The notes under the pieces were generated by a model. The model saw only the letters and a list, made by a program, of their open reading frames with translations. It was not told where the DNA came from and ran no database searches. Below, piece after piece: positions 3,001 through 52,845 of a stretch of DNA of 64,000 bases (its first letter is position 1; the number at the start of each line of letters is the position of its first letter). The position numbers were made by a program, and so were the translations under genes. Source of the DNA: Haplodiscus bocki (lineage: Eukaryota); contig OZ296648.1 in the NCBI GenBank assembly GCA_965655095.1, positions 110,236,001-110,300,000 of the forward strand, in the 5' to 3' direction.

Positions 3001-3100
3001 CTTCCAAATTCAAAGCTCACAGCGTTCGCGAAATACTTCAAAAAACGTCACAAGGTTTGAAAAAAACGAGAAAGTTGGGACGATGCTGCGGATTATGAGC
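1..3100 (+). mobile_element. Decayed Helitron (DUF6570 + Helitron_like_N/HUH Rep region), many stops and frameshifts
   Basis: Manual + strand translation gives Helitron motifs in the expected order: QQGLKESVNNVPV (~385-425) and ARVDKIDQALRKLMQINSLYK (~531-593), both DUF6570-like; SVPGTPAYWKTFSYELLARLEQQIPQFWQTFSCA (~1015-1115); HUH motif KIEFYIRGSPHAHMSLW (ORF 1002..1430); RSYISKEE (~1911-1935); FLNSREVSLQ (~2029-2058); VVRFHKF...HYHFIILYIPWR (~2885-2965). No helicase motifs were seen. Confidence 0.85.
2409..2466 (+). repeat. tRNA-derived (SINE-like) head inside a non-coding segment interrupting the Helitron
   Basis: Degenerate A box (tacctcagttgatacagc) and B box (ggttcaagcccc) at tRNA spacing. 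The anticodon stem does not pair. Clearly related to 47503-47573. Confidence 0.55.
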
Positions 3101-3362
3101 ATTTGTTCACAGCAAAATTTTATAGCAAAATCCATGCATCAGATGAAGCAGAATTGCGGGGAAAAAACTTGAACGATCAAAAAAAGTCTGATGGAATAAT
3201 TGCAACAACCTAAAAATTCGAATAAAAACTATCACAAATAGAACGTTTAGTCCGGACTTTTAGGGCAAATAACCCATAGACTTTCGTTAATGAGCGGCTG
3301 CGAAACGTTAGTAAAGGTGTCATGGGTGAAGAAGCGAGGGTAATAAGAAAATCCAATCTAAT

Positions 3363-33300: not shown

Positions 33301-36300
33301 ACACGCTCCAGAATATCCTATGCTTTAAAAGCTCGATGCATTAAGACTTTTTCACTGAATGCGTTCAAGATCAATTTTTTCCCAAATTGGTGTGGCAAAT
33401 TAAACAATTCCATTTTTTTTTCACAAATGTAAAATCGTAGTTGTTAATGCCTACTTTAGGAACTTGTACAAAAGTTCCCGTTACACCATTTTCACGGTAT
33501 GTAGCGTACACTAGCGAAAAAAAATCAGAGCTGCAAAGACTTTTTCTCAAAAATATGCACTTTCACAAGAATGAAAGCAGTTTAGCTTCATCAATAAAAA
33601 CTTTCAAATACCGATTCTTGCACATCCCGTCATTTGCCTCTTGAGGCTTCATCAAATTCAAGCGTTTGGAAGTGCATCAGAAAAGACCAGTGTCGTGAGG
33701 CATTTATTACAGGAAAACTAAATTCAAATGGCGCAATTCACAGCCAAAATTGTCCGGACCGTGTTGTTTCTGTGGTAGTGCATTTATTACTGACAAGAAC
33801 AGATTCGCAAGGATTTGAAAACGGCAGTTTACTCAGAAGTTGAAAATCACAAGTCATTCAGCATGTTTTCAATGCTACGCATCTAATGTTCGCTCCACAT
33901 CTGGCACTTCTGTTTTCACAGGCCATATGTGGACTGTACCACTGGTGTAGAACAGGGAAATCAAACTGATTGGTGCGTCGTTTACAACTTCTGACAGATC
34001 TGCCACCTTCAAGTCCCCACGAATCGATGCAAGTCAGTGACAAAAGCACCACAACCGTAGATATCTGCTGCGGGTGAAATTGGCCAACCATGGCAATTTT
34101 TCCATTGGCGTAACCGAAGTTTAGCACAACTTACATGCGAAAAACGGAACGGTCGTAACATGTTTCAATTGGCAATGTTGCTGCGAGCATCTTCCAAAAT
34201 TTACCAATTCAAACGTCTCTCTTCCTTCTAGCCTTTATTTTTACAACAACTTTGCATTGTTTCAACCTGTAATTGTACCAAATGTTTTTACTAATCGTTT
34301 CAATTTTTCTAGTTCTGTCTCACAGTCGAAGAATTGAATTTTCCTCCGGAAAATGAATCCACTTTTCCGATAGACTTCTGATCTCATCAAAAAGAACCAC
34401 GAACTAACTACGCAAAATCGAGTTGAGAGCAGGATTTCTAAAAGTGTCAGCTTCATTGAACGAAACGCGAAATACGAATCCAAGATCCGAAATACCAATT
34501 GGCTGGTTTTTCTTGATGGTAGGCATGTGAACATTCCGACGACCGACCACCATAAAGATGGGAATCTCTACACCAGATCACACATCAAGGTACGTAATTT
34601 CAGGCTGGATGTTAAATGGAATTGTAGACTGGAGGCGGAAAGTTTTCAACTACTCATCGTCTATACTACAATTTTTTCTTTCCACCACGCAAACACCGCG
34701 TCGTTGGCACACTTGGTGAGGCTGAGTGGCAGTGAAACAATTCTCTTGATAACTTTTCTTCCCTTCTATTTCCTTTTTCGCTTCGGCCACTCTTCGCTCA
34801 TCCTTCGACGATCCCAATTACAGGAAACAGGTACAAGTAACTGACCCAAAACTTCATTTTAGGTTGTCAATTCGCCTACTGTTTTCCATTCCAAAGCTTC
34901 TAAAACTCTCAAAGTCGAAAACGCTCCAGAATATCCTACGCTTTAAACGCTCGATGCATTAAGACTTTTTCACTGAATGCGTTCAAGATCAACTTTTTCC
35001 CAAATTGGTGTGGCAATTTGAACAATTCCATTTTTTTCACAAATGTAAAATCGTAGATGTTAATGCCTACTTCAGGAACTTTTACAAAAGTTCCCGTTAC
35101 ACCATTTTCACGGTATGTAGCGTACACTAGCGAAAAAAAACAGAGCTGCAAAGACTTTCTCAAAAATATGCACTTTCACAAGAATGAAAGCAGTTTATCT
35201 TCATCAATAAAAACTTTCCAATACCGATTCTTGCACATCCCGTCATTTGCCTCTTGAGGCTTCATCGAATTCAAGCGTTTGAAAGTGCATCAGGAAAGAC
35301 CAGTGTGGTGATGCATTTATTACAGGAAAACTAAATTCAAATAGCGCAATTCACAGCCAAAATTGTCCTGACCGTGTTGTTTCTGTGGTAGTGCATTTAT
35401 TATTGACAAGAACAGATTCGCAAGGATTTGAAAACAGCAGTTTACTCAGAAGTTGAAAATCACAAGTCATTCAGCATGTTTTCAATGCTACGCATCTAAT
35501 GTTCACTCCACATCTGGCACCTCTGTTTTCACAGGCCATATGTGGACTGTACCGCTGGTGTACAACAGGGAAACCAAACTGATTGGTGCGTCGTTTACAA
35601 CTACTGACAAATCTGCCACTTTCAAGTCCCCACGAATCGATGCAAGTCAGTGACAAAAGCACTACAACCGTAGATATCTGCTGCGGGTGAAATTGGCCAA
35701 CCATGGCAATTTTTCCATTGGCGTAATCGAAGTTTAGCGCGAATTACATGCGAAAAACGGAACGGTCGTAACATGTTTCAATTGGCAATGTTGCTGCGAG
35801 CATCTTCCAAAATTTACCAATTCAAACGTCTCTCTTCCTTCTAGCCTTTATTTTTACAACAACTTTGCATTGTTTCAACCTGTAATTGTACCAAATGTTT
35901 TTACTAATCGTTTCAATTTTTCTAGTTCTGTCTCACAGTCGAAGAATTGAATTTTCCTCCGGAAAATGAATCCACTTTTCCGATAGACTTCTGATCTCAT
36001 CGAAAAGAACCACGAACTAACTACGCAAAATCGAGTTGAGAGCAGGATTTCTAAAAGTGTCAGCTTCATTGAATGAAACGCGAAATACGAATCCAAGATC
36101 CGAAATTGGCTGGTTTTTCTTGATTGTAGGCATGTGAACATTCCGACGACCTACCACCATAAAGATGGGAATCTCTACACCAGATCACACATCAAGGTAC
36201 GTAACTTCAGGCTGTATGTTAAATGGAATTGTAGACTGGGGGCGGAAAGTTTTCAACTACTCATCGTCTACACTACAATTTTTTCTTTGCACCACGCAAA

Positions 36301-39300
36301 CGCCGCGTCGTGGGAACACTTGGTGAGGCTGAGTGGCAGTTAAACAATTCTCTTGATAACTTTTCTTAATTTCTATTTCCTTTTTCGCTTCACCCACTCT
36401 TCGCTCATCCTTCGACGATCCCAATTACAGGAAACAGGTACAAGTAACTGACCCAAAATTTCATTTGTAGGTTGTCAATTCGCCTATTGTTTTCCATTCC
36501 AAAGCTTCTAAAACTTTCAAAGTCGAAAACGCTCCAGAATATCCTACGCTTTAAAAGCTCGATGCATTAAGACTTTTTTACTGAATGCGTCCAAGATTTT
36601 CCCAAATTGATGTGGCAATTTGAACAATTCCATTATTTTCACAAATGTAAAATCGTAGATGTTAATGCCTACTTCAGGAACTTATACAAAAGTTCCCGTT
36701 ACACCATTTTCACGGTATGTAGCGTACGCTAGCGAAAAAAAACCAGAGCTGCAAAGACTTTTTCTCAAAACTATTCACTTTCACAAGAATGAAAGCAGTT
36801 TATCTTCATCAATAAAAACTTTCAAATACCGATTCTTGCACATCCCGTCATTTGCCTCTTGAGGCTTCATCGAATTCAAGCGTTTGGAAGTGCATCAGAA
36901 AAGACCAGTGTCGTGATGCATTTATTACAGGAAAACTAAATTCAAATAGCGCAAATCACAGCCAAAATTGTCCTGACCGTGTTGTTTCTGTGGTAGTGCA
37001 TTTATTATTGACAAGAACAGATTCGCAAGGATTTGAAAACGGAAGTTTACTCAGAAGTTGAAAATCACAAGTCATTCAGCATGTTTTCAATGCTACGCAT
37101 TTAATGTTCACTCAACATCTGGCACCTCTGTTTTCACAGGCCATATGTGGACTGTACCACTGGTGTACAACAGGGAAATCAAACTGATTGGTGCGTCGTT
37201 TACAACTTCTGACAGATCTGCCACTTTCAAGTCCCCACGAATCGATGCAAGTCAGTGACAAAAGCACCACAACCGTAGATATCTGCTGCGGGTGAAATTG
37301 GCCAACCATGGCAATTTTTCCATTGGCGTAATCGAAGTTTAGCACAACTTACATGCGAAAAACGGAACAGTCGTAACATGTTTCAATTGGCAATGCTGCT
37401 ACGAGGATCTTTATAATTTACGAACTCAAACGTCTATCTTCCTTCTAGCCTTTATCTTTAAAACAACTTTGCATTGTTTCAACCTGTAATTGTACCAAAT
37501 GTTTTTACTAATCGTTTCAATTTTTCTAGTTCTGTCTCACAGTCGAAGAATTGAATTTTCCTCCGGAAAATGAATCCACTTTTCCGATAGACTTCTGATC
37601 TCATCAAAAAGAACCACGAACTAACTACGCAAAATCAAGTTGAGAGCAGGATTTCTAAAAGTGTCAGCTTCATTGAATGAAACGCGAAATACGAATCCAA
37701 GATTCGAAATACTCATTGGTTGGTTTTTCTTGATTGTAGGCATGTGAACATTCCGACGACCTACCACCATAAAGATGGGAATCTCTACACCAGATCACAC
37801 ATCAAGGTACGTAAGTTCAGGCTGGATGTTAAATGGAATTGTAGACTGGGGGCGGAAAGTTTTCGACTACTCATCGTCTATACTACAATTTTTTCTTTGC
37901 ACCACGCAAACGCCGCGTCGTGGGAACACTTGGTGAGGCTGAGTGTCAGTTAAACAATTCTCTTGATAACTTTCCTTACTTTCTATTTCCTTTTTCACTT
38001 CACCCATTCTTCGCTCATCCTTCGACGATCCCAATTACAGGAAACAGGTACAAGTAACTGACCCAAAATTTCATTTGTAGGTTGTCAATCGCCTACTGTT
38101 TTCCATTCCAAAGCTTCTAAAACTCTCAAAGTCGAAAACGCTCCAGAATATCCTACGCTCTAACTGCTCGATGCATGAAGACTTTTTTTCTGAATGCGTT
38201 CAAGATTTTCCCAAATTGATGTGGCAATTTGAACAATTCCATTTTTTTCACAAATGTAAAATCGTAGATGTTAATGCCTACTTCAGGAACTTTTACAAAA
38301 GTTCCCGTTACACCATTTTCACGGTATGTAGCGTACACTAGCGAAAAAAAACCAGAGCTGCAAAGACTTTTTCTCAAAAATATGCACTTTCACAAGAATG
38401 AAAGCAGTTTATCTTCATCAATAAAAACTTTCAAATACCGATTTTTGCACATCCCGTCATTTGCCTCTTGAGGCTTCATGAAATTCAAGCGTTTGGAAGT
38501 GCATCAGAAAAGACCAGTGTCGTGATGCATTTATTACAGGAAAACTAAATTCAAATAGCGCAATTCACAGCCAAAGTTGTCCTGACCGTGTTGTTTCTGT
38601 GGTAGTGCATTTATTATTGACAAGAACAGATTCGCAAGGATTTGAAAACGGCAGTTTACTCAGAAGTTGAAAATCACATGTCATTCAGCATGTTTTCAAT
38701 GCTACGCATTTAATGTTCACTCCACATCTGGCACCTGTTTTCACAGGCCATATGTGGACTGTACCGCTGGTGTACAACAGGGAAACCAAACTGATTGGTG
38801 CGTCGTTTACAACTACTGACAGATCTGCCACTTTCAAGTCCCCACGAATCGATGCAAGTCAGTGACAAAAGCACCACAACCGTAGATATCTGCTGCGGGT
38901 GAAATTGGCCAACCATGGCAATTTTTCCATTGGCGTAATCGAAGTTTAGCACAACTTACATGCGAAAAACGGAACGGTCGTAACATGTTTCAATTGGCAA
39001 TGTTGCTGCGAGCATCTTCCAAAATTTACCAATTCAAACGTCTCTCTTCCTTCTAGCCTTTATTTTTACAACAACTCTGCATTGTTTCAACCTGTAATTG
39101 TACCAAATGTTTCTACTAATCGTTTCAATTTTTCTAGTTCTGTCTCACAGTCGAAGAATTGAATTTTCCTCCGGAAAATGAATCCACTTTTCCGATAGAC
39201 TTCTGATCTCATCAAAAAGAACCACGAACTAACTACGCAAAATCGAGTTGAGAGCAGGATTTCTAAAAGTGTCAGCTTCATTGAATGAAACGCGAAATAC

Positions 39301-41330
39301 GAATCCAAGATCCGAAATACCCATTGGCTGGTTTTTCTTGATGGTAGGCATGTGAACATTCCGACGACCTACCACCATAAAGATGGGAATCTCTACACCA
39401 GATCACAAATCAAGGTACGTAATTTCAGGCTGGATGTTAAATGGAATTGTAGACTGGAGGCGGAAAAATTTCAACTACTCATCGTCTATACTACAATTTT
39501 TTCTTTCCACCACGCAAACACCGCGTCGTTGGCACACTTGGTGAGGCTGAGTGGCAGTGAAACAATTCTCTTGATAACTTTTCCTTTCTATTTCCTTTTT
39601 CGCTTCGCCCACTCTTCGCTCATCCTTCGACGATCCCAATTACAGGAAACAGGTACAAGTAACTGACCCAAAACTTCATTTTAGGTTGTCAATTCGCCTA
39701 CTGTTTTCCAATCCAAAGCTTCTAAAACTTTCAAAGTCGAAAACGCTCCAGAATATCCTACGCTTTAAAAGCTCGATGCATTAAGACTTTTTTTACTGAA
39801 TGCGTTCAAGATCAACTTTTTCCCAAATTGGTGTGGCAATTTGAACAATTCCATTTTTTTCACAAATGTAAAATCGTAGTTGTTAATGCCTACTTTAGGA
39901 ACTTGTACAAAAGTTCCCGTTACACCATTTTCACGGTATGTAGCGTACACTAGCGAAAAAAACCAGAGCTGCAAAGACTTTTTCTCAAAAATATGCACTT
40001 TCACAAGAATGAAAGCAGTTTATCTTCATCAATAAAAACTTTCAAATACCGATTCTTGCACATCCCGTCATTGGCATCTTGAGGCTTCATCAAATTCAAG
40101 CGTTTGGAAGTGCATCAGGAAAGACCAGTGTCGTAATGCATTTACTACAGGAAAACTAAATTCAAATAGCGCAACTCACAGCCAAAATTGTCCTGACCGT
40201 GTTGTTTCTGTGGTAGTGCATTTATTATTGACAAGAACAGATTCGCAAGGATTTGAAAACGGCAGTTTACTAAGAACTTGAAAATCACAAGTCATTCAGC
40301 ATGTTTTCAGTGCTACGCATCTAATGTTCACTCCACATCTGGCACCTCTGTTTTCACAGGCCATATGTGGACTGTACCGCTGGTGTACAACAGGGAAATC
40401 AAACTGATTGGTGCGTCGTTTACAACTTCTGACAGATCTGCCACTTTCAAGTCCCCACGAATCGATGCAAGTCAGTGACAAAAGCACCACAACCGTAGAT
40501 ATCTGCTGATGGTGAAATTGGCCAACCATGCCCATTTTTCCATTGGCGTAATCGAAGTTTAGCACAACTTACATGCGAAAAACGGAACGGTCGTAACATG
40601 TTTCAATTGGCAATGCTGCTACGAAGTTCTTTATAATTTACGAATTCAAACGTCTATCTTCCTTCTAGCCTTTATCTTTAAAACAACTTTGCATTGTTTC
40701 AACCTGTAATTGTACCCAATGTTTTTACTAATCGTTTCAATTTTTCTAGTTGTCTCACATTCCGACGACCTACCACCATAAAGATGGGAATCTCTACACC
40801 AGATCACACATCAAGCTACGTAACTTCAGGCTGGATGTTAAATGGAATTGTAGACTGGAGGTGGAAAGTTTTCAATTAAGGTTAGTCACATCATTGCTTT
40901 TAGAAAGGCGATTGTGTTACGGTCAAATTGTGAGATCGAGTCCGCGTGAGCGAAGAGGGACTTGTGATATCAGTTGGTTGGAACAACCATGTGCAGAGAT
41001 GCCTCGACGATATGAGCTGTTGAGGACAACTGTTGAGACTGTTTTCTTCCCGTGTGTTCGACAAAGAAGCAGTCATACGTGAAACTTACTCGCCATAAAC
41101 CGAAATTGATGAGGCAATCAATTGTGACGAGAACCAAATAATGAATTTTTTTTGGGAGATGATATTTCTCTTCAAATTACTTCTTCCTGACTATAGAGTA
41201 GCACTTGATTCAAAATGTCCCCAATGTTTTTCCTGTGGCTGCTAGAATTGAAGCTTTTTGTTCAGGAAATTGATAGTGCTCCATACCTTTGCAGGCAACA
41301 GTCATCGTCGGAGAATGTCACTAAGAAAGT
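3363..41330 (-). pseudogene. Unidentified decayed coding sequence (~3 kb single-copy equivalent) whose central 1.6 kb is the amplified array unit
   Basis: Stop-interrupted, protein-like minus-strand frames cross both array borders (right: ...FAHADSISQFDRNTIAFLKAMM*LTLIENFPPPVYNSI; left: ...VFAWCKEKLVV*TWSSSVLKRNRTKYCNCRAFCRIEVP). They also occur inside the unit (KLPWLANFTRSRYLRLW; DLKVADLSEVVNDAPISLISLLYTSGTVHIWPV; LKVLEALEWKTVGELT). No family was recognised. Confidence 0.35.
4179..40875. repeat. Macrosatellite: 23 head-to-tail copies of a ~1.6-kb unit (mostly 1603 bp; last unit internally deleted)
   Basis: The same sequence and ORF set recurs at ~1603-bp spacing (the MPLEAS position falls at 4778, 6382, 7985 ... 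36852, ~38461, ~40072 = 23 copies). The unit junction is ...ggaaagttttcaa|ctactcatcg.... The array starts at ctactc (4179) and ends at ttttcaa (40875). Confidence 0.99.
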
Positions 41331-41497
41331 CACAAAGCAAAAAAATTAGGACCGTCGGGTGTTGAAAATGTTCAGCTGAGCGTGGATGTTCCGAATCTGA
41401 GACGTTTGCGAGAGCAAGGAACACAACGATAGGTTATCTCTTTTCGTTTTTAGTTCAATTTTAACGTACTTCAGCTTACCTATCTGCAATATTTACC

Positions 41498-42103
41498 TTG
41501 TTTTTCACCTTGAAAATCGTCTTTTTTTTGCACACTGTTGCTCTCCAGAAAGTGATAAGTCTAATATCAATTGCTCACATTTCCACTAGCTGTACTACAA
41601 AACCTGCCGTCGTTAACCCCTTTGATGTCCAAAACGTAATTAAGCTCGATGCACCGACGATGGAGGTTTATGCAAGAAACGTCACCAGTCGTCTTTGAAT
41701 ACCTGAGGACCTGGTTCTCACCTACCATGAAGATCTCGGAAGACGCTGTTATGACTAAGTACGACCACCGCCGTTCACTTGCTTACGCTGAAGGCAGAGC
41801 AAGCTTCAACAAACGGGGAAATGGAATAACACAGACCAGGAATACAAAATCACATGCAATCCAGCTCCTAAGACCAGGAAAACTGATAGCTTCATTGTAA
41901 CGCCAAGCCCCCATTGGTTCGGGCAGATTATACATGAGGGTGATTCAAACCTGCCTAAGTTTCCCGAAAAACACGGTTTTGACTACAAGGATACCAATCC
42001 TTCATTCAACCCCGTTCTTTTGCTTCCTAGTATCTCTATTCTGGTAGTTTTTCTGGTAAATTCCATACAGTTCAGGCATGTACTCGGATCTAATTTGACG
42101 TGA
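41498..42103 (+). pseudogene. Possible decayed gene for a small secreted/membrane-anchored protein
   Basis: One frame with only 3 internal stops runs from a hydrophobic N-terminus (FFTLKIVFFLHTVAL) through a Cys/Trp-containing middle (RCYD*VRPPPFTC...GKWNN...ITC) to a hydrophobic C-terminus (PVLLLPSISILVVFLV). Family not established. Confidence 0.25.
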
Positions 42104-44379
42104 CTGCTATGTGACTCCTTTTCGTGCTAGGAGTAATTTCAGCAATACGAACCGGTTTTGTTTCACTTTATGTGAATGGCTTTTTTGAGGCCGCTCACCT
42201 GTTTTTGCTCAGCGCTTTTTCAAGGAATTTTCCATTATTTTCGAATTAACCCCTCGTTGCAGGTTTGTTTATAGTATTATAGCTTTTGATAATACTGGCT
42301 ATTTTTGAAGCCTACCAGTTCTTACTGGTTTTGCGCTCACTCTTCCTGGGTTTACCTGATTTTTTTCGTCCTAACTAGGTCAAAAATCTACTCAGTAATT
42401 TGACCTAAATTTTCGTTTCTTTCAGGAACAAGAAAAACAATTTGGCGCACCAGGTCAGTCGATAGTCTAAAATTCAATCCTCGCGCCTCTTCAGAAGTCG
42501 GTCGTGATTGGCTGGCTGAGCGACAAGGAAAATGTTTTTTACTTCCTTTCATTTCTGTTGACCTTCGCTTCCCGTGAGAGTGAAAGTAGCAGATTGAATT
42601 ATTTTCCGATTTTGCATTGTAGGCCACATCTCCTTTTTTCGTTTTTAAGCTTGAGATTCGGTTTTCATTACATTCGTTTTCGATAATTTTTCACGATGAT
42701 AGACTATGCCGTTAATGCCTCGCATCCGTTTGAAAGCTATGGTTTTACACGTAGAAGAAGTCGAGTTCTCAAATGGTTCTGATGTATGGCCTTGAGTATG
42801 CCCTCCCAACTAACTTTTTTTTGAGCCGAGCACAGGTTTTACCGTTTATTGTCGACGCTCCTCTTTCGAGCAGCAGAGTGGCTCACCAAATACCAAATTC
42901 CAAAATTCCTAATTTTATTTTCACGATTTTTTTCTACAAAAATGAAATTGCCTAAAGACGTTGTAATTGGCAAATGTTGTCCCATTGCGATGGCTGACCA
43001 GTGAAAACGACGACTGAGGAGGAGAGACCCGACGCTACTGTTTTACGTTAAAGGCAGCACGAGAAAATTGTCAGCAGCAATCAGATTTGGAAAAATTGTT
43101 ATGTTTGTTCTGACGCATACAGCAAAGTACAAGCACGATTTGGAGTGAGACCTGACAATTATGACGGAGACTGTTTGGTTCATCTTTCACCTATCGTGAG
43201 AAATACATCGTATTTTTCCACAACTTGTCCGATTGGTTTCTCCGCTGGACGTGACTGATCTGTCGGTGTTTATTGAAAGCTCTACTGCAACGGAAACGTT
43301 GATGCTTGGCCCAATTCAGTTCATTAACTCAGACTGCGACCCTAAATGTAAAAACCACTACACTAATGATTCTGATTTGATCAGAATCCAGAGAAGAAAA
43401 CTGACACCTGGCAACGAAATTAATACTTTTTTGATTTTGAGATATGCCTCAATTTTCAACTCTTCCAAACCTAGAAATCCAGTTCTGGAGGCACAAACAG
43501 ACTATCAGAACCTTGACGCTCTTATTACTGCTTGTTTTGTGGAAGATCAAGGTTTGACTCCTCTCCAATTGGATTCTTGTACTGAAGGAGAACCGTTGCA
43601 AAAGCCCAAAAAAACGAACTCAAAAACGTCGACGGGAGTCTAAACTTGCGTCATTGAAGTTTTACGAGAACCTGACCAACGATGCGAATGCTGAATTTGA
43701 TTTCGTGGAGTGCCGAATTGTTTTTTTCTTATCTGATCAAGAATTACCATTGGGACGGGCCTCGTTTAGTTCCTCTCCATCAGATTTGAGAGACCAGAGA
43801 ACAGTTTAGGAGTTATCTTCGAGTGAATCATCGATTGAGAAGCTGCTCTCACAAAAAATGCTACAAAATGATTCTGGTTCAAGCGATGATATCCCAATTC
43901 CTCACCGAAGGACATCTTCACCTGTAAAGAATGATCTGCTCTCCAGTCCCCATTTCAATGATTATCTTTTTCATTACAGGGAAACAGAATGGTGGAAGTT
44001 GCAAACTCATTTTGTCAGGAAAACAAATTCTTACTTTTATACGCTGGAGCGTCTCTCAGCTCCACCAATTCTCTTGCAGCCCTTGAGGGTTTACGTTCCA
44101 TCTGAGTAATGTGGCAGCGCAAATTTTGCTTTCATTGAAAAAAGGTTGATTCGAAGGCCAAAATAGTTGACTCGCCCGCGTGTTTATGTGTACAAAATGA
44201 AGAGACAATTCAATGATAGAATTAGGGTAATGGAGGCTACCTAAGGGGGTTTTTTTGTGTTCTCAATTTCTCACAGCTTTCGCTACATCTAGACCAGTGT
44301 AACCGGTCTGAAATGGTTGAATATACCGTAGAAAGGCAGCTACAGTGAAAGTTCGATGAACCCGTGGAGACAGTTTCTG

Positions 44380-45780
44380 CGGCAGATGCTTCTAATTTAT
44401 ATTTGCAACTCAGTCTTGTTCTAGAAACAGGTGTTTCTAATGTCGACTCCGGTGATGATGAATTTCGTTCGTTTTAGTTAGCTATAGCCCAGTTACGCCC
44501 ACTTCTCAGAATGTAGAGATAGAGCATTGAATCAGCAGCGCTGTAAAATTGCAACTCTGAGCCGGATTGGAGTATGATTGTCCCGCCTCTCAGGGATGAA
44601 TTGCTTCTGGCTGTCCAAAATCAAGGCTCAAATATGACAGACCGGTTCCAAATCAGATTGAAAATTGTCTTCAACGCTGCAGATTTAATAGGTGAGTGCC
44701 ATTTTTTAAATATGTTTCAGCATAACAGTTTTCATGGATGCAACTATTAAACAGCTGATGGTGTTGCGATTGAAGAATCTCATAGCTACTATCCATTCCA
44801 TCAAACGTTCACTATTAGAACTGCTGATATTCAAAACACGTGGTGCTTGCAGAAATGCTTAGGAGCAGGTGAGAAACGTGGAACGTTTGCGGAGTGAAAG
44901 AAAAATCAGCCTTCGCTGACATGCTTGATGGCCTGCCTTTAACGGCTGGAATGGACTACATCCATTGTCTTCTTTTTGAAAAATGTCTAGACGTTCTCCG
45001 TTATTCCCTTGGAAGCATGGATCGACAACAGAACTCCAGCAAAGTATTGATTTTTTGCTTGCGCCGCGGGAAAGAAAAAGGATGCTTGTATAGTCCTTAA
45101 CTTGGAAGACATGGCAATTCTTCAAAGTAAAAGATTTCAACTACTCAATGTTTGTCGGACCTGTTGTTTTGCAAAAGTTTGCCAATGAACAACTTCAATC
45201 ACGCTATGAAATTCGTCAAGGCAAAACGATTGCTCTTAGAATCTTGGCACGAAGATGAACTCTTGGAAGTCGACGCTTCCTTGAAGCACTTTTGAGAGAA
45301 TACAGTGTATACGTTTGACTCCGGAAAAAAGAAACTATCAATGTGCACATACTGAAACATCCTGTGTCACGATGTAGGGATTTCGGTACGTTGTTGGTTT
45401 TTCCAGAGAAAGCTTTTGAAGCTGCTAATAAAACGTTTGGTAGGATTGCAAATGGAATCTTGCGTTCCCTGTCCGATTATATGTCGCTGGTTTATTCAAA
45501 AATAGGAACTTTTGAAAACAAAAATGGAAGGAGACAACTCTGCGAGACACCACCACCAAAGTTTGCGGTCAAGAGTAACCCCTACTTGGGAAGAAACAGA
45601 CAGACGATTCTATCGAAGGCCAGGAAGTTGTATCCTAGTGCATCTTATCTGTCGCCTGTCAGAGTCAATGGAGTTTTCCTGGGATCTGCATCTTGTCACA
45701 GTAATCTGAATGGGCCCAACAGCTACGTAAAACTCATGGCAAATGGTAAAACATCGTTTGGTCAGATAATTTTTTTATGA
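44380..45780 (+). mobile_element. Decayed EnSpm/CACTA-superfamily transposase
   Basis: Ordered motifs typical of animal EnSpm-like transposases: LKIVFNAADLIGECHFLNMFQHNSFHGCNY (~44658-44747; cf. DLPAxA..LNM.Q.NG..GC), GMDYIHCLL (~44948; cf. DYMH), FKVKDF..FVGPVVL (~45120; cf. FKASE), NVHILKHPVSRCRDFGTLLVFPEKAFE (~45340; cf. NVH.L.H....V...GPL...S.F.FE). Stops and frameshifts are present and termini were not identified. Upstream ORF 43233..43643 may belong to the same element. Confidence 0.8.
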
Positions 45781-47502
45781 ATGACGAAACTGTTGATACT
45801 TTGGTTTATCTCAAAGAATTCGATGAAGTCACGACATCAACCTTCCTGGTGGGTTTCATCATAAAAAGGAGAATAGTAAGCGTAAAATTAGAGTGAACGT
45901 TGAGCGGTTAGAGAAAATGTTCCACATTGAAGTTGATACTGAAAATAGTGAGGTGCTTTCATTAGCTTTTTGATTAAAATAATTAGATTTTTGTTGAAAT
46001 TACGTTTTCCGCAGACCTAGTAGATGCTTCCGTTTCCCATCGGTGGTCCATGGATGCATACATTCCGAGGCACAAGGATTTTTTAGGCGCATAGGCCGTT
46101 TTTGAGATTTTCATTTCCATCGATGGGCACCGGTCTCCCATGAAGTCTCAGTACGGAAAGGCATAGACTCCCAAACAGCTCCTAGCGCAGCTCAATGCTG
46201 TTAAAATGGCTCAATTATTATCTCTGTGATTTCATCTGAACAATATTATCATAGGTGAGGTCTGCACGTCTCCAGACCGATTGGGCACGCTTCATCAACG
46301 GTTCTGTGGAACACAATACTTGAATCATCGGAACAAAGAATTTACTTTCTGGAGGTCTTGCTGACCTGTACCAATTACTAACCTGTACCAATTACCTTCT
46401 GTCACAATCAAACCAGTTTGAGGCTCCCGCAAACCTTACAAAACGATACAAGTTAACTGGAGACAGTTCAAGTTTCTCGAACTGAGTAAAGGTTTGAGGC
46501 ATTAGAATCTTTTGCGGAGCTTTTGACACGAATTTGAGTTGTAAAGTACTGTCATCTCTTTAATCATTACTTCTGTCACAAACTGTCGACCAGGAGGTCT
46601 CCTCAAATGAACGTTTGGATCAAGAAGGTGCTCCAATAGCCACCACGTAACGGGTGTTAAACATGATTAAAACCTAGGCATCAAGGATGCTAGGCATTAA
46701 GCGCTGAGAATTTGGAGTAGTAGAAAAAGAATTCGAGCCGAATTCGGGAATATTGACGGATGGTTTTCAAAAATCAGAAAAAAAATCATGCTAAAAACTG
46801 ATTAATTTCAGAGATTTGACAAATGAATTAGGAAACAATTCAACAAACTGCATAAATTTTCGGCCACTCATGACCGATTGAAAACAAGGCAAGCAATAAA
46901 AATGAAAGAAAATAGCTCTCTACTTCACTCCTTTACCGCTCAGCCGGCCAGCATTCACAAAGATGTAAGGGCTTGAGCTTAACAGCCTAATGCTAAAGAA
47001 GTATGTTCGCTTCCATGAGAAAGTTTTGCCAGCCCGCAAACTAGTGAAAATAAACATGGATTTTCAAAGCTGGCATTGCTGCAGCTGATTACAGGCTCCT
47101 AATTGAATGCATACAATGAAAAAATTGTGCTGAGGATTGTGAACAAATGCATGAATAATCTATGTAGCAAATATGATAAGTATATTGCACTCATCTTACT
47201 TATTACTTATGTTACAACGAATTATTAATTTGGTTCCGCATTCATTTGGCGTTGTGAATGTGTGCCTAGAGATCGATTGATTCGCGCCGTCTGAAATGAA
47301 AATGACCAAGCGTATCAAGCCATTTTTTTTCTCAGCTTATCTGTTACTGAAAACAAAATACTGCGAACGTTAACAGCTCAACTAATACATTTGAAAGCAG
47401 AGGCGAAGCAGTGCTTCGTAACACTTGCGCAAACGGAATACAAGTAACAAACGCTATAATATTTCATCCGCTTGATATTTTAAATAAAACAATTATTCTC
47501 AA

Positions 47503-47573
47503 GCGGGAATGGCACAGTCAGTAGAGCATGCAGCTGCGGTGCGATAGGTCCTAGGTTTGACTCGAACTCTCCC
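47503..47573 (+). repeat. tRNA-derived (SINE-like) head, second copy
   Basis: gcgggaatggcacagtcagtagagcatgcagctgcggtgcgataggtcctaggtttgactcg has an A-box-like tggcacagtcag and a degenerate B box. It aligns nearly ungapped with 2409-2466. Confidence 0.55.
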
Positions 47574-47864
47574 TTCTCTTTGATCAAAATTTAGGAGCTT
47601 TTGCGAGTTGCGAACGGAATGAGAAGTCCGCAGAAGCCTGTGATATAATATTCCCTTGCGCAATTGTAAAAACGTAAACACCCTGCTGGCTCATTGCCTT
47701 CTTACACTTTTCGAACTTGCAAAAAGTAGAAGATCAAGGTTTCTCAGTTTTTGGCTGAACAAGGAATATTTAAAAAAGCAGAGCCGCCAGTAACGATAAG
47801 CATCAATCACCCCTTAGGGGATTTGATATAATTTCAGCTAGATTGTTCAAGCTAAAGCACTTAC

Positions 47865-48065
47865 TGGTCAATTCAACGCCCTGTTGAAACGATAGAGCTC
47901 CAACAGCTACCAAAGATGTGATTTCTCCAACATCAAAGCCTCCAGCCATTATCAGATTGTCGTGAATGAACGGCTTGTAAACACGGAGCAGTTCCATTTC
48001 TGCGAGGGAACTCACCAAAGCAGCTACTTGAGAATGCCTCGTCTGGTTTAGTAGCTCCTGAGGAC
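47865..48065 (-). CDS. MCAT: Internal exon (201 bp, phase 1/1) of an MCAT/FabD-like gene
   Basis: Acceptor ttttatag| and donor |gtaagt. Translation (G)PQELLNQTRHSQVAALVSSLAEMELLRVYKPFIHDNLIMAGGFDVGEITSLVAVGALSFQQGVELT aligns without gaps to the animal MCAT segment I recall (GPQETLDRTVHCQPAIFVASLAAVEKL...AAGFSVGEFAALVFAGAMEFAEG). No stops. Confidence 0.88.
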
Positions 48066-48159
48066 CTATAAAAGCAACTGTTTTGCAAACTTATCGTGTT
48101 AGTCAGTGTATTCGCATCATGATACACTGATCATCAAAACTGAATTCGAAAATTGTATA

Positions 48160-48541
48160 CACAGAAGCGAAGCCAACGGAATACTTGCGAACAAAGTGAA
48201 CAAGTATATCTGGTTTTTGAATGGGCCACGGTACCACGAAAACTACTGATTAAATAAATGTACAGAAATTTAATGAACTCAGTTAACTCATACATTTATA
48301 TACAAGTGTAAGAAGTACAAACGGCTATATGAGTCAATTCACTTTATATTTGAAAACAAGCACGCAAGATGGAGAACAGACCATGTGAACACATTATTGC
48401 AACAAAGCAAGAGCGCATGGACAAACTCTCGCAACATTAGAATGTCGAAAAAATGGAGGTTTGTGAGCAGAGCGGAAAATGACAGAACCCTGTGATACAA
48501 TTGCTTGCGCAAGTATACCGAGAGGCGAAGCAGAACTTCGC
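48160..48541 (+). repeat. Diverged dispersed repeat, copy A (homologous to 50355-50770)
   Basis: Shared colinear blocks with copy B, e.g. ccacggtac, acagaaatttaa, tcagttaa, atttatatacaagtg.aagaagta, gtgaaca.att.ttgcaac and cctg.gata. Confidence 0.7.
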
Positions 48542-49456
48542 ACAGCTGGCATAACAGGAGGATTTAACTTTTTTGAATACCAGAAACAAAATCACTGCAG
48601 GTTACATGAAAGTCAACCAAAAATGTCTTTCCGAAAATATCGAGACCTCTTCACTAAGCTTAGAGTTTGAGGTAAAAGGTAGTTTATCAAAAGATTTCGA
48701 GAAACTGGAAAAAATGAAGTAGCTCGACATTTGCTACACTGCTGTTTTCATCGACGAAAAATTCATCTCAATTCCTGACATTTTCGAGAAAAGTCAATAT
48801 CAGGGAATCTAAGATCAAACCACTACACGGCAAATGGGACAGCAAACCAAAAGTTGTCAGCGATACGAAAAAAAGCGGACAGGCCTTAAAGCTGGCAAAT
48901 CAAATTCCTCAAGTTTTACGGAAACTCGGAGCAGAACGACCCATCAATAGACAGGGGGAAAACGTGCCGAAATAATGAGATATTTCCCGATTGCCGAAAA
49001 GAACTAATCTCTAATTAAAATTCAAAAAAAAATAATGAAAACTAACGAAATTAGCTGATTTCCCAACTAAAAAAATGCCAAAACGACCATTTAATAGCAA
49101 AACATTCGGCGTAAAGAATATGATTTTAAAAAGGTACTCTCGTATTGGTTTTAAATGCACTTGTAGCTAAAAGCAGAATAAGAAGGCAAAAGAGCGCAAA
49201 AAATCGAAACAAGGGCATTGCCTGGTTCACATGGAACTACGGAAAATATCAAAGAACAAATTTGCAACTTCTTGCTCTATAAAGATAATATAGTGCTTCT
49301 GTGTCATATTGGTTGGGCATGTTTGCTGGACAGTTGATATGGGAGGCGAAAGGGGCGAAAAATCGCAATATCTTTTTTGGTATATTTTTATATCGTCAGA
49401 AACATCACTTAGGCAACTGGAAAACCTCAATAAGGAACAATTTTAGATATTTCTAT

Positions 49457-49801
49457 TATACCTGTATACATTTATGATTCTGTATTATTTCACTTTTGGA
49501 AAGCAGCTGGAAAGTTTACAAGGAAACTAAAATTGCGAAAATTTCGGTAAAATCTGTGAATCAGCTAGTTTTGGCCGACTTCAAAACATTCGGAGGCCAT
49601 TTTCTCACAAAACTTTCAACGATTCAAAAAACTGGTCAAAATTCAACGCTTTGTGTTGAATTATCCTGTTTGCGTAGCTCGAAGGATGATTCGATAGGCA
49701 GAAGAGTTAAAGTTGCCAAAACTACAGCAAAATTCAACTACTCTTGGGCATTAAAAACGAGAGAATTCGCAATTTATCCCGAAAAGTTTGTGCACAGTAT
49801 A
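49457..49801. mobile_element. Degenerate palindromic MITE-like element
   Basis: Roughly concentric inverted repeats: tatacctgtataca / tgtgcacagtata at the ends and tagttttggc (~49566) / gccaaaacta (~49715) inside. Confidence 0.4.
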
Positions 49802-50104
49802 CGTTGGTATTAATTCAGTCAAAATCTTCGCGAAAATAATGTCTTGGCAGCAAAAAATCGAAATTTACGGAAAAATGAACATATTTCAAACAGTCGAATC
49901 TTTAGCTCAACTTTCCAAATGATATAAGCTTTGAAATTTCATACGAACTCGAAATCTGGGCGCACATAGTCGTAACTGAGAAAAACTTTCATTTCCGAAA
50001 GAGCTTGCAAAAAATCCTCGATGCAGAAAACATCTCTCTCAATTGAGAAATTAGGCATTTTCTCTAAAAGTCGCAAAAATGAGAAAAAATGTCGATTAAA
50101 AAAA

Positions 50105-50180
50105 TGGTCAAGATTGGATTCGAACCCGGATGCTTGTAGTAATCCAGGGCAAATGGACATCGTCATTAGCCAGTATCACA
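50105..50180 (-). repeat. Pol III B-box-containing SINE/tRNA-like remnant
   Basis: Perfect B box GGGTTCGAATCC on the minus strand (50116-50127) with a weak upstream A-box-like tggctaatg. No cloverleaf. Confidence 0.35.
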
Positions 50181-50354
50181 AAAGATTTTTCCTGTCCTAA
50201 TAGAAGAAACGTTCGTCGCACTGCTCATTTGGTGCGAGTTGTAAAAGGAAAGGTCAAAAAACGCCCGCCCACCATAATACGTTGGTTGCCAGCTTAAAGA
50301 GTCCAAGTTCCAATCAGCTGAACAATTCCTTCAAGATTTTCTACCTTTTGTATG

Positions 50355-50770
50355 CATAGAGGCGAAGCTGTGCTGCGCGACAATTGAGCCAACGGGATAC
50401 TAGTGAATAAATTCAACAAGTATAACTGATTGAAGTTCCACGGTACTACAGAAACTACAGACAAAACAATTAAACAGAAATTTAAAAATTCAGTTAATTC
50501 TCATAAATTTATATACAAGTGCAAGAAGTAGGAAAGACATAGCAGTTACTTATCCTTAAATTTAATTAAAACAAGCGGCCACGCAGGAAAATACGCCACG
50601 TGAACAAATTTTTGCAACTGAACGAGAGCACATGAATGACTTGCAAAATTGAGAGCACATGAGCAAAATCTAGCCGACATAAGAATGCAGGCACAAATGC
50701 GTGTTGTGAATGGATCGGAAAAAAGTCAGCAGGAGCCTGCGATATAACACTTGCTTCCACGAGTGTAAAA
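50355..50770 (+). repeat. Diverged dispersed repeat, copy B
   Basis: Colinear similarity to 48160-48541. It begins with gcgaagc...cgggatactagtgaataa, and the actagtgaataaa motif also occurs at ~2306. Confidence 0.7.
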
Positions 50771-50867
50771 ACATTTTTCAATTCCTTTCCTGGAAAGGGG
50801 TGGGTCAAAGCTACAGTTGACAGCTGACAGTTGAACGATTCAATAATCATAAACATCCCTAACTAAC

Positions 50868-51211
50868 CATTCGAACAAATATCCGATAATCTGTACCCAA
50901 TTATTTCATCTGCTTCATCAAAAAGCTGTCGACTAGATGGATTCGTCAACACAGTGTCCACAAAACCAGGTTTCAAAGGCATCAAAGTTCCGGGAAACAA
51001 ATACACACTTTTAGATGCATAATCCCACTCTTGTTTCTGCGAAACTCTCCGACATTCATTTTCCTGTTCATCAAACAAATTGGGCGACGTGGACTCCAAA
51101 AAATTTCCTGACTCGTCCAAATTGACATCGTCGCTTTCATGCGGACTGTGTAACGATATCTGCGCATCATCAAGTAGTTGTTGAATATTCACTCCGTCTT
51201 TCTTCTCAAAT
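50868..51211 (-). CDS. MCAT: Exon (~344 bp) of the MCAT/FabD-like gene, N-terminal part of the mature domain
   Basis: Contains ORF 50863..51192: GVNIQQLLDDA (cf. MCAT GVAELLRDA) ... SVYLFPGTLMPLKPGFVDTVLTNPSSRQLFDEADEIIGYRLSDICSNG (cf. SVLLFPGQGSQVVGMGRGLLNYPRVRELYAAARRVLGYDLLELSLHG). The donor is firm. The acceptor catttag| at 51212 is the best guess, since an in-frame TGA lies just upstream. Confidence 0.85.
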
Positions 51212-51830: not shown

Positions 51831-51858
51831 ATAATCACACTAGCACTACCAACCTTAC

Positions 51859-51984
51859 CGTTCGTAAAGTGAAGTAGGTGGATTGAAAGTGGAAGGACCG
51901 TCTGTGTAGAAGTCTGTAGTTGTTAGATACGTTTGCCGAAATGTATCGAAAAATCAGGTCAACTGTCACTCCTTTTGATAGCAT
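51859..51984 (-). CDS. Candidate 5' exon of the MCAT-like gene (mitochondrial-targeting-like peptide)
   Basis: ATG at 51984 gives MLSKGVTVDLIFRYISANVSNNYRLLHRRSFHFQSTYFTLRT (Arg/Ser-rich, one acidic residue), ending at a strong donor CG|gtaagg. In this frame the donor is phase 0, which does not match the phase-2 acceptor at 51211. A different frame or acceptor is needed, so the exact model is unresolved. Confidence 0.4.
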
Positions 51985-52845
51985 CTGTTTGCAAGCATAG
52001 CACCTACCGAACATATTGCTCTGAAATGGGAAAAATTCATAGGTCTGTCTGAAAGCCTTTTGTTTGCTACCGGATAGTTTTTACACGGAATTGCATACAG
52101 AAATTGAACTGAAAAATTCAAGTTTGCGTTATTTTTGCGTGATTCCAGAGCTTGCTCGATACTCCACCATTCGTCCAACGTTCCATAAGATTTACCTCTT
52201 GATATGTCATTTCGATAAGTGGCAAAATATTCACAAATCAACTACTTCAGTATGCTTGAAATAGACCAGGAAATTTAATTTCAGCTTCCAAGTGGGTGCC
52301 TATGGTACTGAATTTCCACATGTATTCCTTTCATACAAATCGACAAAAATTATAGAAGTTGCCAATTTTTTACATTCACTCCGCAATTTCGTACGAAAAC
52401 GAGCCACAAAAAGCCGCGTGCTCCGGTCATACCTTCACCACCAGAATTTTCCGCAGTTCTAAAACCCAAAAGTGGGAAACTACGAAGAGGATATAAAACT
52501 GGCCAACGTCAATTGTGGTCGAAACTTTCTTACTTTCGAAATTTTTCCACTGACTGAAAAGACATAAAAAATCCCTGTTACCAGGTTATTCGGTTTTCAT
52601 GGTCATATGATAAAATCTCCGATTTTTAAATACAGTCTAATGTATGTGTTCTAACTTCTAGTTTTGCCTCTTTTATGCCAGAGCGGGTTTTAGTATCTTC
52701 TGAATTTTCAGGTAGAATATGTCTTTGATGGATGCGAGGTGCCCTCGATTGGACTTGCTACAAGCTTGAAATCAACAGCTCGTCAAAGAAGAGATTTTGT
52801 TAGATAAAAAAGTCAACTTTTTTCAAGAGCGTTCAACTCTAGTTC

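What the first reader, a model, noticed from the sequence alone, without database searches (positions are those of the whole stretch)
47865..51211. Intact-looking MCAT/FabD paralog with both catalytic motifs lost: candidate pseudoenzyme
Seen: two stop-free exons with canonical, phase-matched splice sites sit among heavily decayed repeats, which suggests the gene is maintained. The nucleophile elbow reads GFDVG instead of G-x-S-x-G, and the N-terminal motif reads FPGTLMP instead of FPGQGSQ. Established: in FabD/MCAT that Ser carries the malonyl group and the PGQG Gln helps form the oxyanion hole; human MCAT has also been observed bound to mitoribosomal small-subunit assembly intermediates. Inference: this copy cannot do normal transacylation and may be kept for a structural role such as mitoribosome assembly or mtACP binding, either after duplication or after loss of mitochondrial fatty-acid synthesis in this lineage. 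It also has an acidic stretch (HESDDVNLDESGNFLES...DEQENE) before the domain.
Basis: partly seen in the sequence, partly recalled or inferred. Interest (0 to 1): 0.78.

Follow-up and report, generated by a model that had tools for sequence, protein, structure and literature searches.

The report
Conserved catalytically dead mitochondrial MCAT gene
This animal's only copy of MCAT, the enzyme that starts fatty-acid synthesis in mitochondria, has lost its catalytic residues yet has stayed intact under strong selection across related species, so it probably survives for a non-enzymatic job such as helping to build mitochondrial ribosomes.

Summary
The two exons belong to a complete five-exon, 450-codon MCAT gene on the minus strand. 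The first exon (52014-51854) encodes a presequence-like peptide. The last two exons lie 0.5-2.6 kb before the window start, across a 48.4-kb intron that holds a 23-copy satellite.

All splice sites are GT-AG, phases match and there is no stop. Catalytic Ser is Asp, catalytic His is Asn, and the PGQG Gln is Thr. The malonyl-binding Arg is kept. Contigs of two DNA runs confirm the sequence.

It is the genome's only detectable MCAT, so it is the orthologue, not a paralogue. A related species shares the same three substitutions at 73% identity (dN/dS about 0.10). Three more distant relatives also lack the Ser.

Three ketoacyl-synthase models find nothing in this genome, while thiolase, LipB and LipA models do. 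Loss of fatty-acid synthesis therefore fits.

Best reading: a maintained pseudoenzyme, probably kept for the mitoribosomal small-subunit assembly role shown for human MCAT. That role is inferred, and no RNA data exist. Other notes of this scan call the genome an acoel worm; I did not test that.

The parts
51854..52014 (-). Coding exon E1: ATG plus 53 codons (MFGRCYACKQ...TLRTV), presequence-like (K+R 8, D+E 1), donor AAG|gttggt, phase 2
   Evidence: Found by scanning for ATG...GT phase-2 candidates. The independently found candidate in the relative's locus L021 (4634-4800) is homologous: alignment z=10.5, 0 of 500 shuffles reach it. Sequence and donor are shown.
50868..51211 (-).
   Evidence: Aligns to profile positions 27-115 of canonical eukaryote MCATs. 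Orthologous exons are in L021, L004 and L008.
50986..50988 (-). ACT = Thr (T129 of the 450-aa model) at the position of the PGQG oxyanion-hole Gln
   Evidence: The canonical set has Gln in 100% of rows.
47865..48065 (-).
   Evidence: Human MCAT E=7e-10. Pfam Acyl_transf_1 E=0.012. Contigs of two runs are identical.
47932..47934 (-). GAT = Asp (D213 of the model) at the position of the catalytic Ser
1..47864 (-). Window part of the 48,410-bp intron between E3 and E4. The gene continues before the window start: E4 = G000:C1:110235454-110235208 (Arg kept, small subdomain) and E5 = G000:C1:110233807-110233408 including the stop (GGFNTRLM, His to Asn at 110233773-110233771).
   Evidence: An independent ENA assembly of the same species (L022) carries identical E4 and E5.
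4177..40875 (.). Tandem array inside that intron: 23 units of about 1603 bp, 94.5-100% identical. Not part of the coding gene.
   Evidence: No Rfam or tRNA match.

Best explanation
This is the single MCAT (mitochondrial malonyl-CoA:ACP transacylase, FabD family) orthologue of this animal genome. It is a five-exon gene of 450 codons spanning about 54 kb.

Shown:
- The protein keeps the whole MCAT fold and the N-terminal extension of animal MCATs.
- The acyl-enzyme nucleophile (Ser to Asp), its general base (His to Asn) and the oxyanion-hole Gln (to Thr) are gone. It therefore cannot run the ping-pong transacylation.
- The malonyl-carboxylate Arg is kept.
- The dead state is old and selected. 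A related species has the same three substitutions with dN/dS about 0.10.
- The wider clade has lost the Ser in every member. The former active-site columns drift, while about 120 other columns are invariant.
- No ketoacyl synthase is detectable in the genome, so the enzymatic job appears to have become unnecessary.

Inferred: the protein is imported into mitochondria through a presequence-like first exon. It is kept for a non-catalytic role, most likely the one shown for human MCAT. There MCAT binds the immature head of the mitoribosomal small subunit together with METTL17 and holds rRNA helices h31 and h42 apart until it leaves.
For: Gene structure and integrity.

Full-length homology: the spliced model scores 303 bits end to end against a profile of 33 canonical eukaryote MCATs. 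E3 matches human MCAT at E=7e-10.

Catalytic columns: the canonical set has Q, S, H and R in 94-100% of rows. This protein has T, D, N and R.

Sequence is real: contigs of two runs from two samples show no differences. A second assembly carries identical E4 and E5.

Single copy: searches with P0016 and P0034 find only this locus. The one other hit (E=2.8) is noise.

Selection: the L021 orthologue has 72.7% amino-acid identity, pS 0.68, pN 0.166 and omega about 0.10. The intron position and phase before E2 are the same.

Clade: own, L021, L004 and L007 form one group (SH-aLRT 100). The stem is 1.79 substitutions per site and the later branches are 0.2-0.56. That pattern suggests a function shift followed by renewed constraint.

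Pathway context: PF00109, TIGR03150 and PF02801 find nothing. The same tool finds thiolase in 8 exon-sized matches (four gene-sized clusters by position), LipA, LipB and Rsm22/METTL17.

[quoted passage not shown] The MCAT homologue mt-SAF36 is one in T. brucei (PMC8784144).
Against: - No RNA run exists for this organism, so transcription and the five-exon splicing are not shown.
- The 48-kb intron with a young satellite could impair expression in this species.
- Nothing here tests binding to the mitoribosome. Mitochondrial import is judged only from composition.
- The invariant Arg could mean that malonyl or ACP binding, not ribosome binding, is what is selected.
- LipB/LIPT2 and LipA/LIAS are present. 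They normally need octanoyl-ACP from mitochondrial fatty-acid synthesis, so the missing ketoacyl synthase could be a search miss.
- dS is near saturation, so omega is approximate.
Confidence: 0.55

Rival explanations
1. The protein is a maintained pseudoenzyme, but what is selected is ligand or partner binding in the old active-site cleft. Candidates are malonyl-CoA, malonate or holo/acyl-ACP. It would act as a sensor, sequestering protein or ACP scaffold rather than as a ribosome-assembly factor.
For: The malonyl-carboxylate Arg is invariant in all five clade members, while the other pocket residues drift. The GxxxGE elbow glycines and Glu are kept. Mitochondrial ACP has roles beyond fatty-acid synthesis (established knowledge).
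Against: The Gln, the Thr/Gln of the TxxxQPA motif, the Ser and the His all vary within the clade. That argues against a conserved pocket. The Arg sits in a helix that is also structurally conserved. No precedent is known to me.
Confidence: 0.2
2. The gene is dying in this species. It looks intact only because inactivation is recent, for example poor splicing across the satellite-filled 48-kb intron or loss of its promoter next to a Gypsy element.
For: Intron 3 is 48.4 kb here against 1.1 kb in the relative L021. It holds a 23-copy array whose units are 94.5-100% identical. TE-derived env-like ORFs lie 1.7 kb upstream of E1. There is no expression evidence.
Against: There are 450 codons without a stop or frameshift, and all four introns have GT-AG and matching phases. 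pN is 0.166 against pS 0.68 relative to L021. Neutral decay on this branch would have pushed those values closer together. Large introns are ordinary in a 1.5-Gb genome.
Confidence: 0.07
3. It is still an acyltransferase or hydrolase that uses an unconventional mechanism, for example Asp as nucleophile or a different substrate.
For: Asp nucleophiles exist in other alpha/beta-type enzymes (recalled knowledge). The elbow geometry G-x-D-x-G-E and the Arg are kept.
Against: The general-base His is Asn in this species and in L021. The same position as the Asp is Gly in L004-L008, so no nucleophile is conserved in the clade. The oxyanion-hole motif is degenerate and variable.
Confidence: 0.04

Closest known systems
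Human MCAT (mitochondrial malonyl-CoA:ACP transacylase; PDB 2C2N; in pre-mtSSU particles 8CSP-8CSS)
   Same: It is the orthologous protein with the same fold over the full length. Both have the N-terminal extension, the GFxVGE elbow context, the Arg, and the KWE and ExGxG motifs. As I recall, the human gene has a comparably small exon count. The proposed function copies the human assembly-factor role.
   Different: Ser is Asp, His is Asn and PGQGSQ is PGTLMP, so there is no transacylase chemistry. The protein sits on a very long stem branch. It has clade-specific invariant residues, including a His/Cys set in the small subdomain. It lives in a genome with no detectable ketoacyl synthase.
Trypanosoma brucei mt-SAF36 (acyl transferase-like protein, PDB 7PUA/7PUB chain Fg)
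   Same: It has an MCAT fold and is found as a mitoribosomal small-subunit assembly factor whose knock-down destabilises rRNA. This shows that the fold is used for that job in a distant eukaryote.
   Different: Sequence similarity to the present exon is only marginal (E=1.1). The lineage and size differ (550 aa). I did not check whether its catalytic residues are intact.
Bacterial FabD (E. coli, PDB 1MLA/2G2Z)
   Same: It belongs to the same family (Acyl_transf_1). The defining catalytic set Gln11, Ser92, Arg117 and His201 maps onto the columns examined here.
   Different: Only the Arg of that set survives. FabD has no N-terminal extension and no presequence, and no ribosome-related role is known.
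Other Ser-less eukaryote MCAT-like proteins in public assemblies (unnamed)
   Same: Several lineages have lost the nucleophile. One is an insect-affiliated group with GFG[IV]GE plus PGEG (P0009, P0039, P0064, P0251-P0256, P0275). Others are P0034 and P0060 (GYDVG), P0092 (GYNVG) and P0110 (GMGVG plus His to Asn).
   Different: They do not group with this clade on the tree. Their organisms are unknown, most are fragments, and selection on them was not tested.

Membership tests
MCAT/FabD (Pfam Acyl_transf_1, EC 2.3.1.39) | Full-length homology to the acyl-transferase fold (large alpha/beta subdomain plus small ferredoxin-like subdomain) | tested here: met
   The spliced model scores 303 bits over positions 27-381 of a 383-position profile of canonical eukaryote MCATs. 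E3 matches human MCAT at E=7e-10. Single exons stay below the Pfam cut-off, and the whole-genome PF00698 scan misses them.
MCAT/FabD (Pfam Acyl_transf_1, EC 2.3.1.39) | Nucleophilic Ser in the G-x-S-x-G elbow | tested here: not met
   GFDVG, with GAT at 47934-47932. Ser is present in 100% of canonical rows. Confirmed in contigs of two runs.
MCAT/FabD (Pfam Acyl_transf_1, EC 2.3.1.39) | Catalytic His (E. coli His201, GAFHT motif) | tested here: not met
   GGFNTRLM. His is present in 94% of canonical rows.
MCAT/FabD (Pfam Acyl_transf_1, EC 2.3.1.39) | PGQG(S/A)Q motif with the oxyanion-hole Gln | tested here: not met
   FPGTLMP. Gln and the following Gly are present in 100% of canonical rows.
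MCAT/FabD (Pfam Acyl_transf_1, EC 2.3.1.39) | Arg that binds the malonyl carboxylate (E. coli Arg117) | tested here: met
   KARGEAM. The Arg is invariant in all five clade members.
MCAT/FabD (Pfam Acyl_transf_1, EC 2.3.1.39) | Malonyl-CoA:ACP transacylase activity | not testable with these tools
   Needs an enzyme assay. The sequence predicts no activity.
Pseudoenzyme (catalytically dead homologue kept by selection) | Catalytic residues lost while the fold is kept | tested here: met
Pseudoenzyme (catalytically dead homologue kept by selection) | Purifying selection after the loss | tested here: met
   The L021 orthologue shares the D, N and T states. NG86 gives pN 0.166, pS 0.68 and omega about 0.10. 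121 of 396 columns are invariant across the clade.
Pseudoenzyme (catalytically dead homologue kept by selection) | Expressed as RNA and protein | not testable with these tools
   No RNA run holds the stretch. All four runs found are DNA-type contigs of one study.
Mitoribosomal small-subunit assembly factor of the MCAT type (human MCAT, T. brucei mt-SAF36) | Physical presence on pre-mtSSU particles with METTL17/Rsm22 | not testable with these tools
   Only the precedents are known. A METTL17/Rsm22 homologue exists in this genome (three exons on C5).
Mitoribosomal small-subunit assembly factor of the MCAT type (human MCAT, T. brucei mt-SAF36) | Mitochondrial targeting | tested here: inconclusive
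   The first exon is basic and nearly free of acidic residues here and in L021 and L008. No targeting predictor was available.

The most novel reading that the evidence does not exclude
A whole animal lineage (acoel worms, if the other notes are right) has discarded both cytosolic and mitochondrial fatty-acid synthases. It nevertheless keeps MCAT as a pure, catalytically dead mitoribosome-assembly factor. That would be a natural separation-of-function experiment. It would show that the assembly role is ancestral in animals, independent of catalysis, and by itself enough to keep the gene. The protein may also have gained a new His/Cys (metal?) site. The retained LipB and LipA would point to an unknown source of octanoyl groups for lipoylation.
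Probability: 0.3. Interest if true: 0.8.

Novelty: new variant of a known kind. Interest (0 to 1): 0.62.

Why it matters
Human MCAT was found on immature mitoribosomal small subunits in 2022. MCAT disease mutations were then re-read as possible assembly defects. Whether that role needs catalysis, and how old it is, remains open.

A lineage in which the only MCAT has lost Ser, His and Gln, yet evolves at dN/dS of about 0.1, gives an evolutionary answer: something other than transacylation keeps this fold. It also supplies a ready-made reagent. The dead orthologue can be tested for rescue of the ribosome defect, but not the lipoylation defect, in MCAT-null cells.

Two further points follow. The loss of the nucleophile has happened in several eukaryote lineages. 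This genome also appears to lack every ketoacyl synthase while keeping LipB and LipA, which raises the question of how its mitochondria obtain lipoate precursors and acylate ACP.

Tried and rejected
- **Memory-typed probes.** It found just the two known exons and suggested a truncated gene. Searches with tool-derived MCATs overturned this and found the last two exons just before the window start.
- Searches used an offset wrong by one base. This was corrected, and all coordinates in this report are the corrected ones.
- **Whole-genome PF00698 scan** found nothing, not even this gene. It therefore cannot be used as evidence about other MAT domains.
- **Paralogue idea** rejected. Exon and full-length protein searches of the genome return only this locus. 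The weak hit on C10 is noise.
- **RNA evidence** is unavailable. Read laying could only confirm the DNA.
- **Tandem Repeats Finder** missed the 1.6-kb array because of its period limit. Self-BLAST found it. It has no Rfam or tRNA match.
- **Mpp10 synteny**, seen in L004-L006 and L008, is not present in the window.
- **First exon.** tblastx and blastn between the upstream regions of this gene and L021 did not find it. A splice- and charge-based scan did.
- **Organism.** It could not be named from the LIAS search. The best named hits are only 60-66% identical and are spread across Metazoa.
- **Operators' rules.** No N stretch was filled (L008 and L013 contain some and were read with X).
Full report
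**What is in the sequence**

- 51211-50868 has acceptor cattTAG| and donor AATG|gttagt.
- 48065-47865 has acceptor ttttatAG| and donor ACCA|gtaagt.
- They join in phase 1 to read ...DICSNG|PQELLNQT...

The first carries FPGTLMP where MCAT/FabD proteins have FPGQGSQ. The second carries GGFDVGE where they have G-x-S-x-G-E. The second exon alone matches human MCAT residues 110-172 at E=7e-10, with human GFSVGE over GFDVGE. It gives a weak Pfam Acyl_transf_1 hit (E=0.012). Contigs of two public DNA runs from two samples cover both exons with no differing letter. The Asp codon (GAT, 47934-47932) is therefore real.

**The gene is larger than the finding**

A first tblastn with memory-typed probes saw only these two exons.
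- E4 = G000:C1:110235454-110235208.
- E5 = 110233807-110233408, including the stop.

It contains a tandem array of 23 units of about 1603 bp, 94.5-100% identical (window 4177-40875).

A first coding exon was then found at 52014-51854: ATG, 53 codons, MFGRCYACKQ...TLRTV, donor AAG|gttggt, phase 2. I scanned for ATG...GT candidates of the right phase. The same scan, run independently on the relative's locus L021, gave one candidate family, and the two peptides are homologous (z=10.5, 0 of 500 shuffles). The peptide is basic (K+R 8, D+E 1), like a mitochondrial presequence. That last point is an inference.

The complete model has five exons, 1353 nt and 450 codons. All four introns are GT-AG with matching phases, and there is no internal stop. 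An independent ENA assembly of the same species (L022) carries identical E4 and E5.

**It is an MCAT orthologue with a dead active site**

The spliced protein scores 303 bits end to end against a profile built from 33 canonical, Ser-containing eukaryote MCATs.

In the canonical set the four catalytic columns are conserved at 94-100%. Here they read as follows.

| Column | Canonical | This protein (450-aa numbering) |
|---|---|---|
| Oxyanion-hole residue in PGQG | Gln | Thr129 |
| Nucleophile | Ser | Asp213 |
| General base | His | Asn330 |
| Malonyl-carboxylate binder | Arg | Arg238 (kept) |

With nucleophile, base and oxyanion residue gone, the ping-pong transacylation of FabD/MCAT cannot run. 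This rests on established enzymology of the family.

**It is the only copy**

Exon-level and full-length protein searches of the genome return only this locus. The one extra hit (C10, E=2.8) translates to noise. It is therefore the orthologue, not a paralogue beside a working enzyme. The caveat is that the search's first look is loose, and the family scan with PF00698 misses even this gene.

**The dead state is old and under selection**

A search of 1.84 billion representatives with E3 gave no close match (best 45-61%). It did surface exon-sized ORFs from eukaryotic contigs in ENA metagenome assemblies. A word search with E5 found the same species again (P0249) and a closer relative (P0250, 68%).

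The relative's contig (L021) carries all exons within 6 kb and shows FPGTLM, GGFDVGE, GGFNT and ARGEAM. The two coding sequences compare as follows by Nei-Gojobori.

| Measure | Value |
|---|---|
| Amino-acid identity | 72.7% |
| pS | 0.68 |
| pN | 0.166 |
| dS | about 1.8 |
| dN | 0.19 |
| omega | about 0.10 |

dS is near saturation, so omega is approximate, but the excess of silent change is plain.

More distant orthologues also lack the Ser.

| Locus | Elbow | His region | PGQG region | Neighbour |
|---|---|---|---|---|
| L004-L006 | GIGVGE | kept | FGGDSL | Mpp10 upstream |
| L007 | GIGVGE | kept | not recovered | SUZ12 downstream, as in this species |
| L008 | GIGVGE | not covered | FPGALTSL | Mpp10 upstream |

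On a tree, own, L021, L004 and L007 form one group (SH-aLRT 100). The stem is 1.79 substitutions per site and the later branches are short.

Within the clade the former active-site columns drift:
- Gln position: T, T, D, A.
- Ser position: D, D, G, G, G.
- His position: N, N, H, H.
- The TxxxQPA motif is degenerate.

In contrast, 121 of 396 columns are invariant, and 50 of those differ from the canonical consensus. The invariant block is densest in the small subdomain (PVCSVAAHVFQCSKIIGGHMRCLKH). Selection therefore acts on something other than catalysis.

**Pathway context**

With the same whole-genome tool:

| Model | Result |
|---|---|
| PF00109 (ketoacyl synthase, N) | no match |
| TIGR03150 (fabF) | no match |
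| PF02801 (ketoacyl synthase, C) | no match |
| Thiolase_N (positive control) | 8 exon-sized matches, down to 39 aa, in four gene-sized clusters by position |
| LipA/LIAS | intronless 351-aa ORF, E=5e-119 |
| LipB/LIPT2 | two exons |
| Rsm22/METTL17 | three exons |

The genome thus seems to lack both FASN and mitochondrial OXSM. That would make MCAT's enzymatic role redundant. The presence of LipB and LipA is then unexplained, and it keeps a search miss possible.

The LIAS search shows an animal with no close named relative: 60-66% identity to taxa across Metazoa. Two follow-up notes of this scan call the genome an acoel worm, which I did not test. If that is right, the result agrees with the report that the acoel Symsagittifera roscoffensis does not make long-chain fatty acids de novo (Meyer et al. 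1979, as cited in PMC4183113).

**How it most likely works**

Human MCAT is a bona fide assembly factor of the mitoribosomal small subunit. Together with METTL17 it keeps the head rRNA open, sequesters h31 and blocks h42 until it dissociates (PMC9892005). In T. brucei the MCAT homologue mt-SAF36 sits on small-subunit intermediates, and its knock-down destabilises rRNA (PMC8784144).

The simplest account of a single-copy, imported, catalytically dead but strongly conserved MCAT is that this second role is what selection preserves. The first three properties are supported here, with import only inferred. The role itself is inference.

The rivals are:
- a binding role of the old cleft, since the invariant Arg fits that;
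- recent death of the gene in this species, given the 48-kb satellite-laden intron and the lack of RNA data;
- unconventional catalysis, which is contradicted by Gly at the Asp position in relatives and by the lost His.

**Wider pattern and novelty**

Other eukaryote MCAT-like proteins without the Ser exist in public assemblies.
- An insect-affiliated group has GFG[IV]GE plus PGEG. Its nearest named hits are insect MCATs at 52-58% identity.
- P0034 and P0060 have GYDVG.
- P0092 has GYNVG.
- P0110 has GMGVG plus His to Asn.

Parsimony on the tree needs four losses, and well-supported branches force at least two. Every hit that carried a source name and whose motif could be read kept the Ser. 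Paper searches for a catalytically inactive or pseudoenzyme MCAT found nothing.

I therefore rate this as a new variant of a known kind. The family and its moonlighting role are known. A lineage that keeps only the non-catalytic protein appears not to have been described.

Noticed in passing
window 4177-40875: A tandem array of 23 units of about 1603 bp, 94.5-100% identical, fills most of the 48.4-kb intron. It has no Rfam or tRNA match and only short ORFs with no recognisable product. The same intron is 1.1 kb in the relative L021.
   Followed up: partly
L021:13301-13702 (against 10015-10417): The last exon of the orthologous gene is duplicated 3.3 kb downstream in the related species, with its acceptor and stop and only a few substitutions. 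Another note of this scan describes a duplicated terminal exon in a different gene of this genome.
   Followed up: no
E4, G000:C1:110235454-110235208 (residues H290, C294, C304, H307 of the 450-aa model): His and Cys residues in the small subdomain (AAHVFQCSKIIGGHMRCLKH) are invariant in the clade. Canonical MCATs have Tyr, Gly, Ala and Phe at those positions. This may be a newly gained metal-binding site. Spatial proximity was not checked.
   Followed up: no
G000:C10:3866336-3867232 and G000:C2:31691044-31691811: Lipoyl synthase (an intronless 351-aa ORF with a presequence-like start) and LipB/LIPT2 are present, although no ketoacyl synthase is detectable. The source of octanoyl-ACP in this animal is unexplained.
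   Followed up: partly
window 48148-48263 and 50468-50815: High-copy repeats inside the 2.8-kb intron. Summed contig depth is 1000-2700, against about 45 for the flanks. Two related copies lie in the same orientation, and a tRNA-like GGTTCGAATCC box sits near 50130.
   Followed up: no
window 53710-55853, minus strand: ORFs of 312, 167 and 127 aa with a transmembrane or fusion-protein look lie 1.7 kb upstream of the gene's first exon.
   Followed up: no
L022:10551-12569; L007:19256 onward; L004:2987-4681; L008:3-728: Synteny around the gene is partly conserved. An intronless SUZ12 gene lies directly downstream in this species and in L007. Mpp10 lies directly upstream in L004-L006 and L008, but not within 13 kb upstream here.
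   Followed up: partly
proteins P0009, P0039, P0064, P0251-P0256, P0275, P0295, P0034, P0060, P0092, P0110: MCAT-like proteins from other, unnamed eukaryotes also lack the catalytic Ser (Gly, Asp or Asn). One insect-affiliated group also has Gln to Glu in PGQG. This suggests repeated conversion of MCAT into a non-enzyme.
   Followed up: partly
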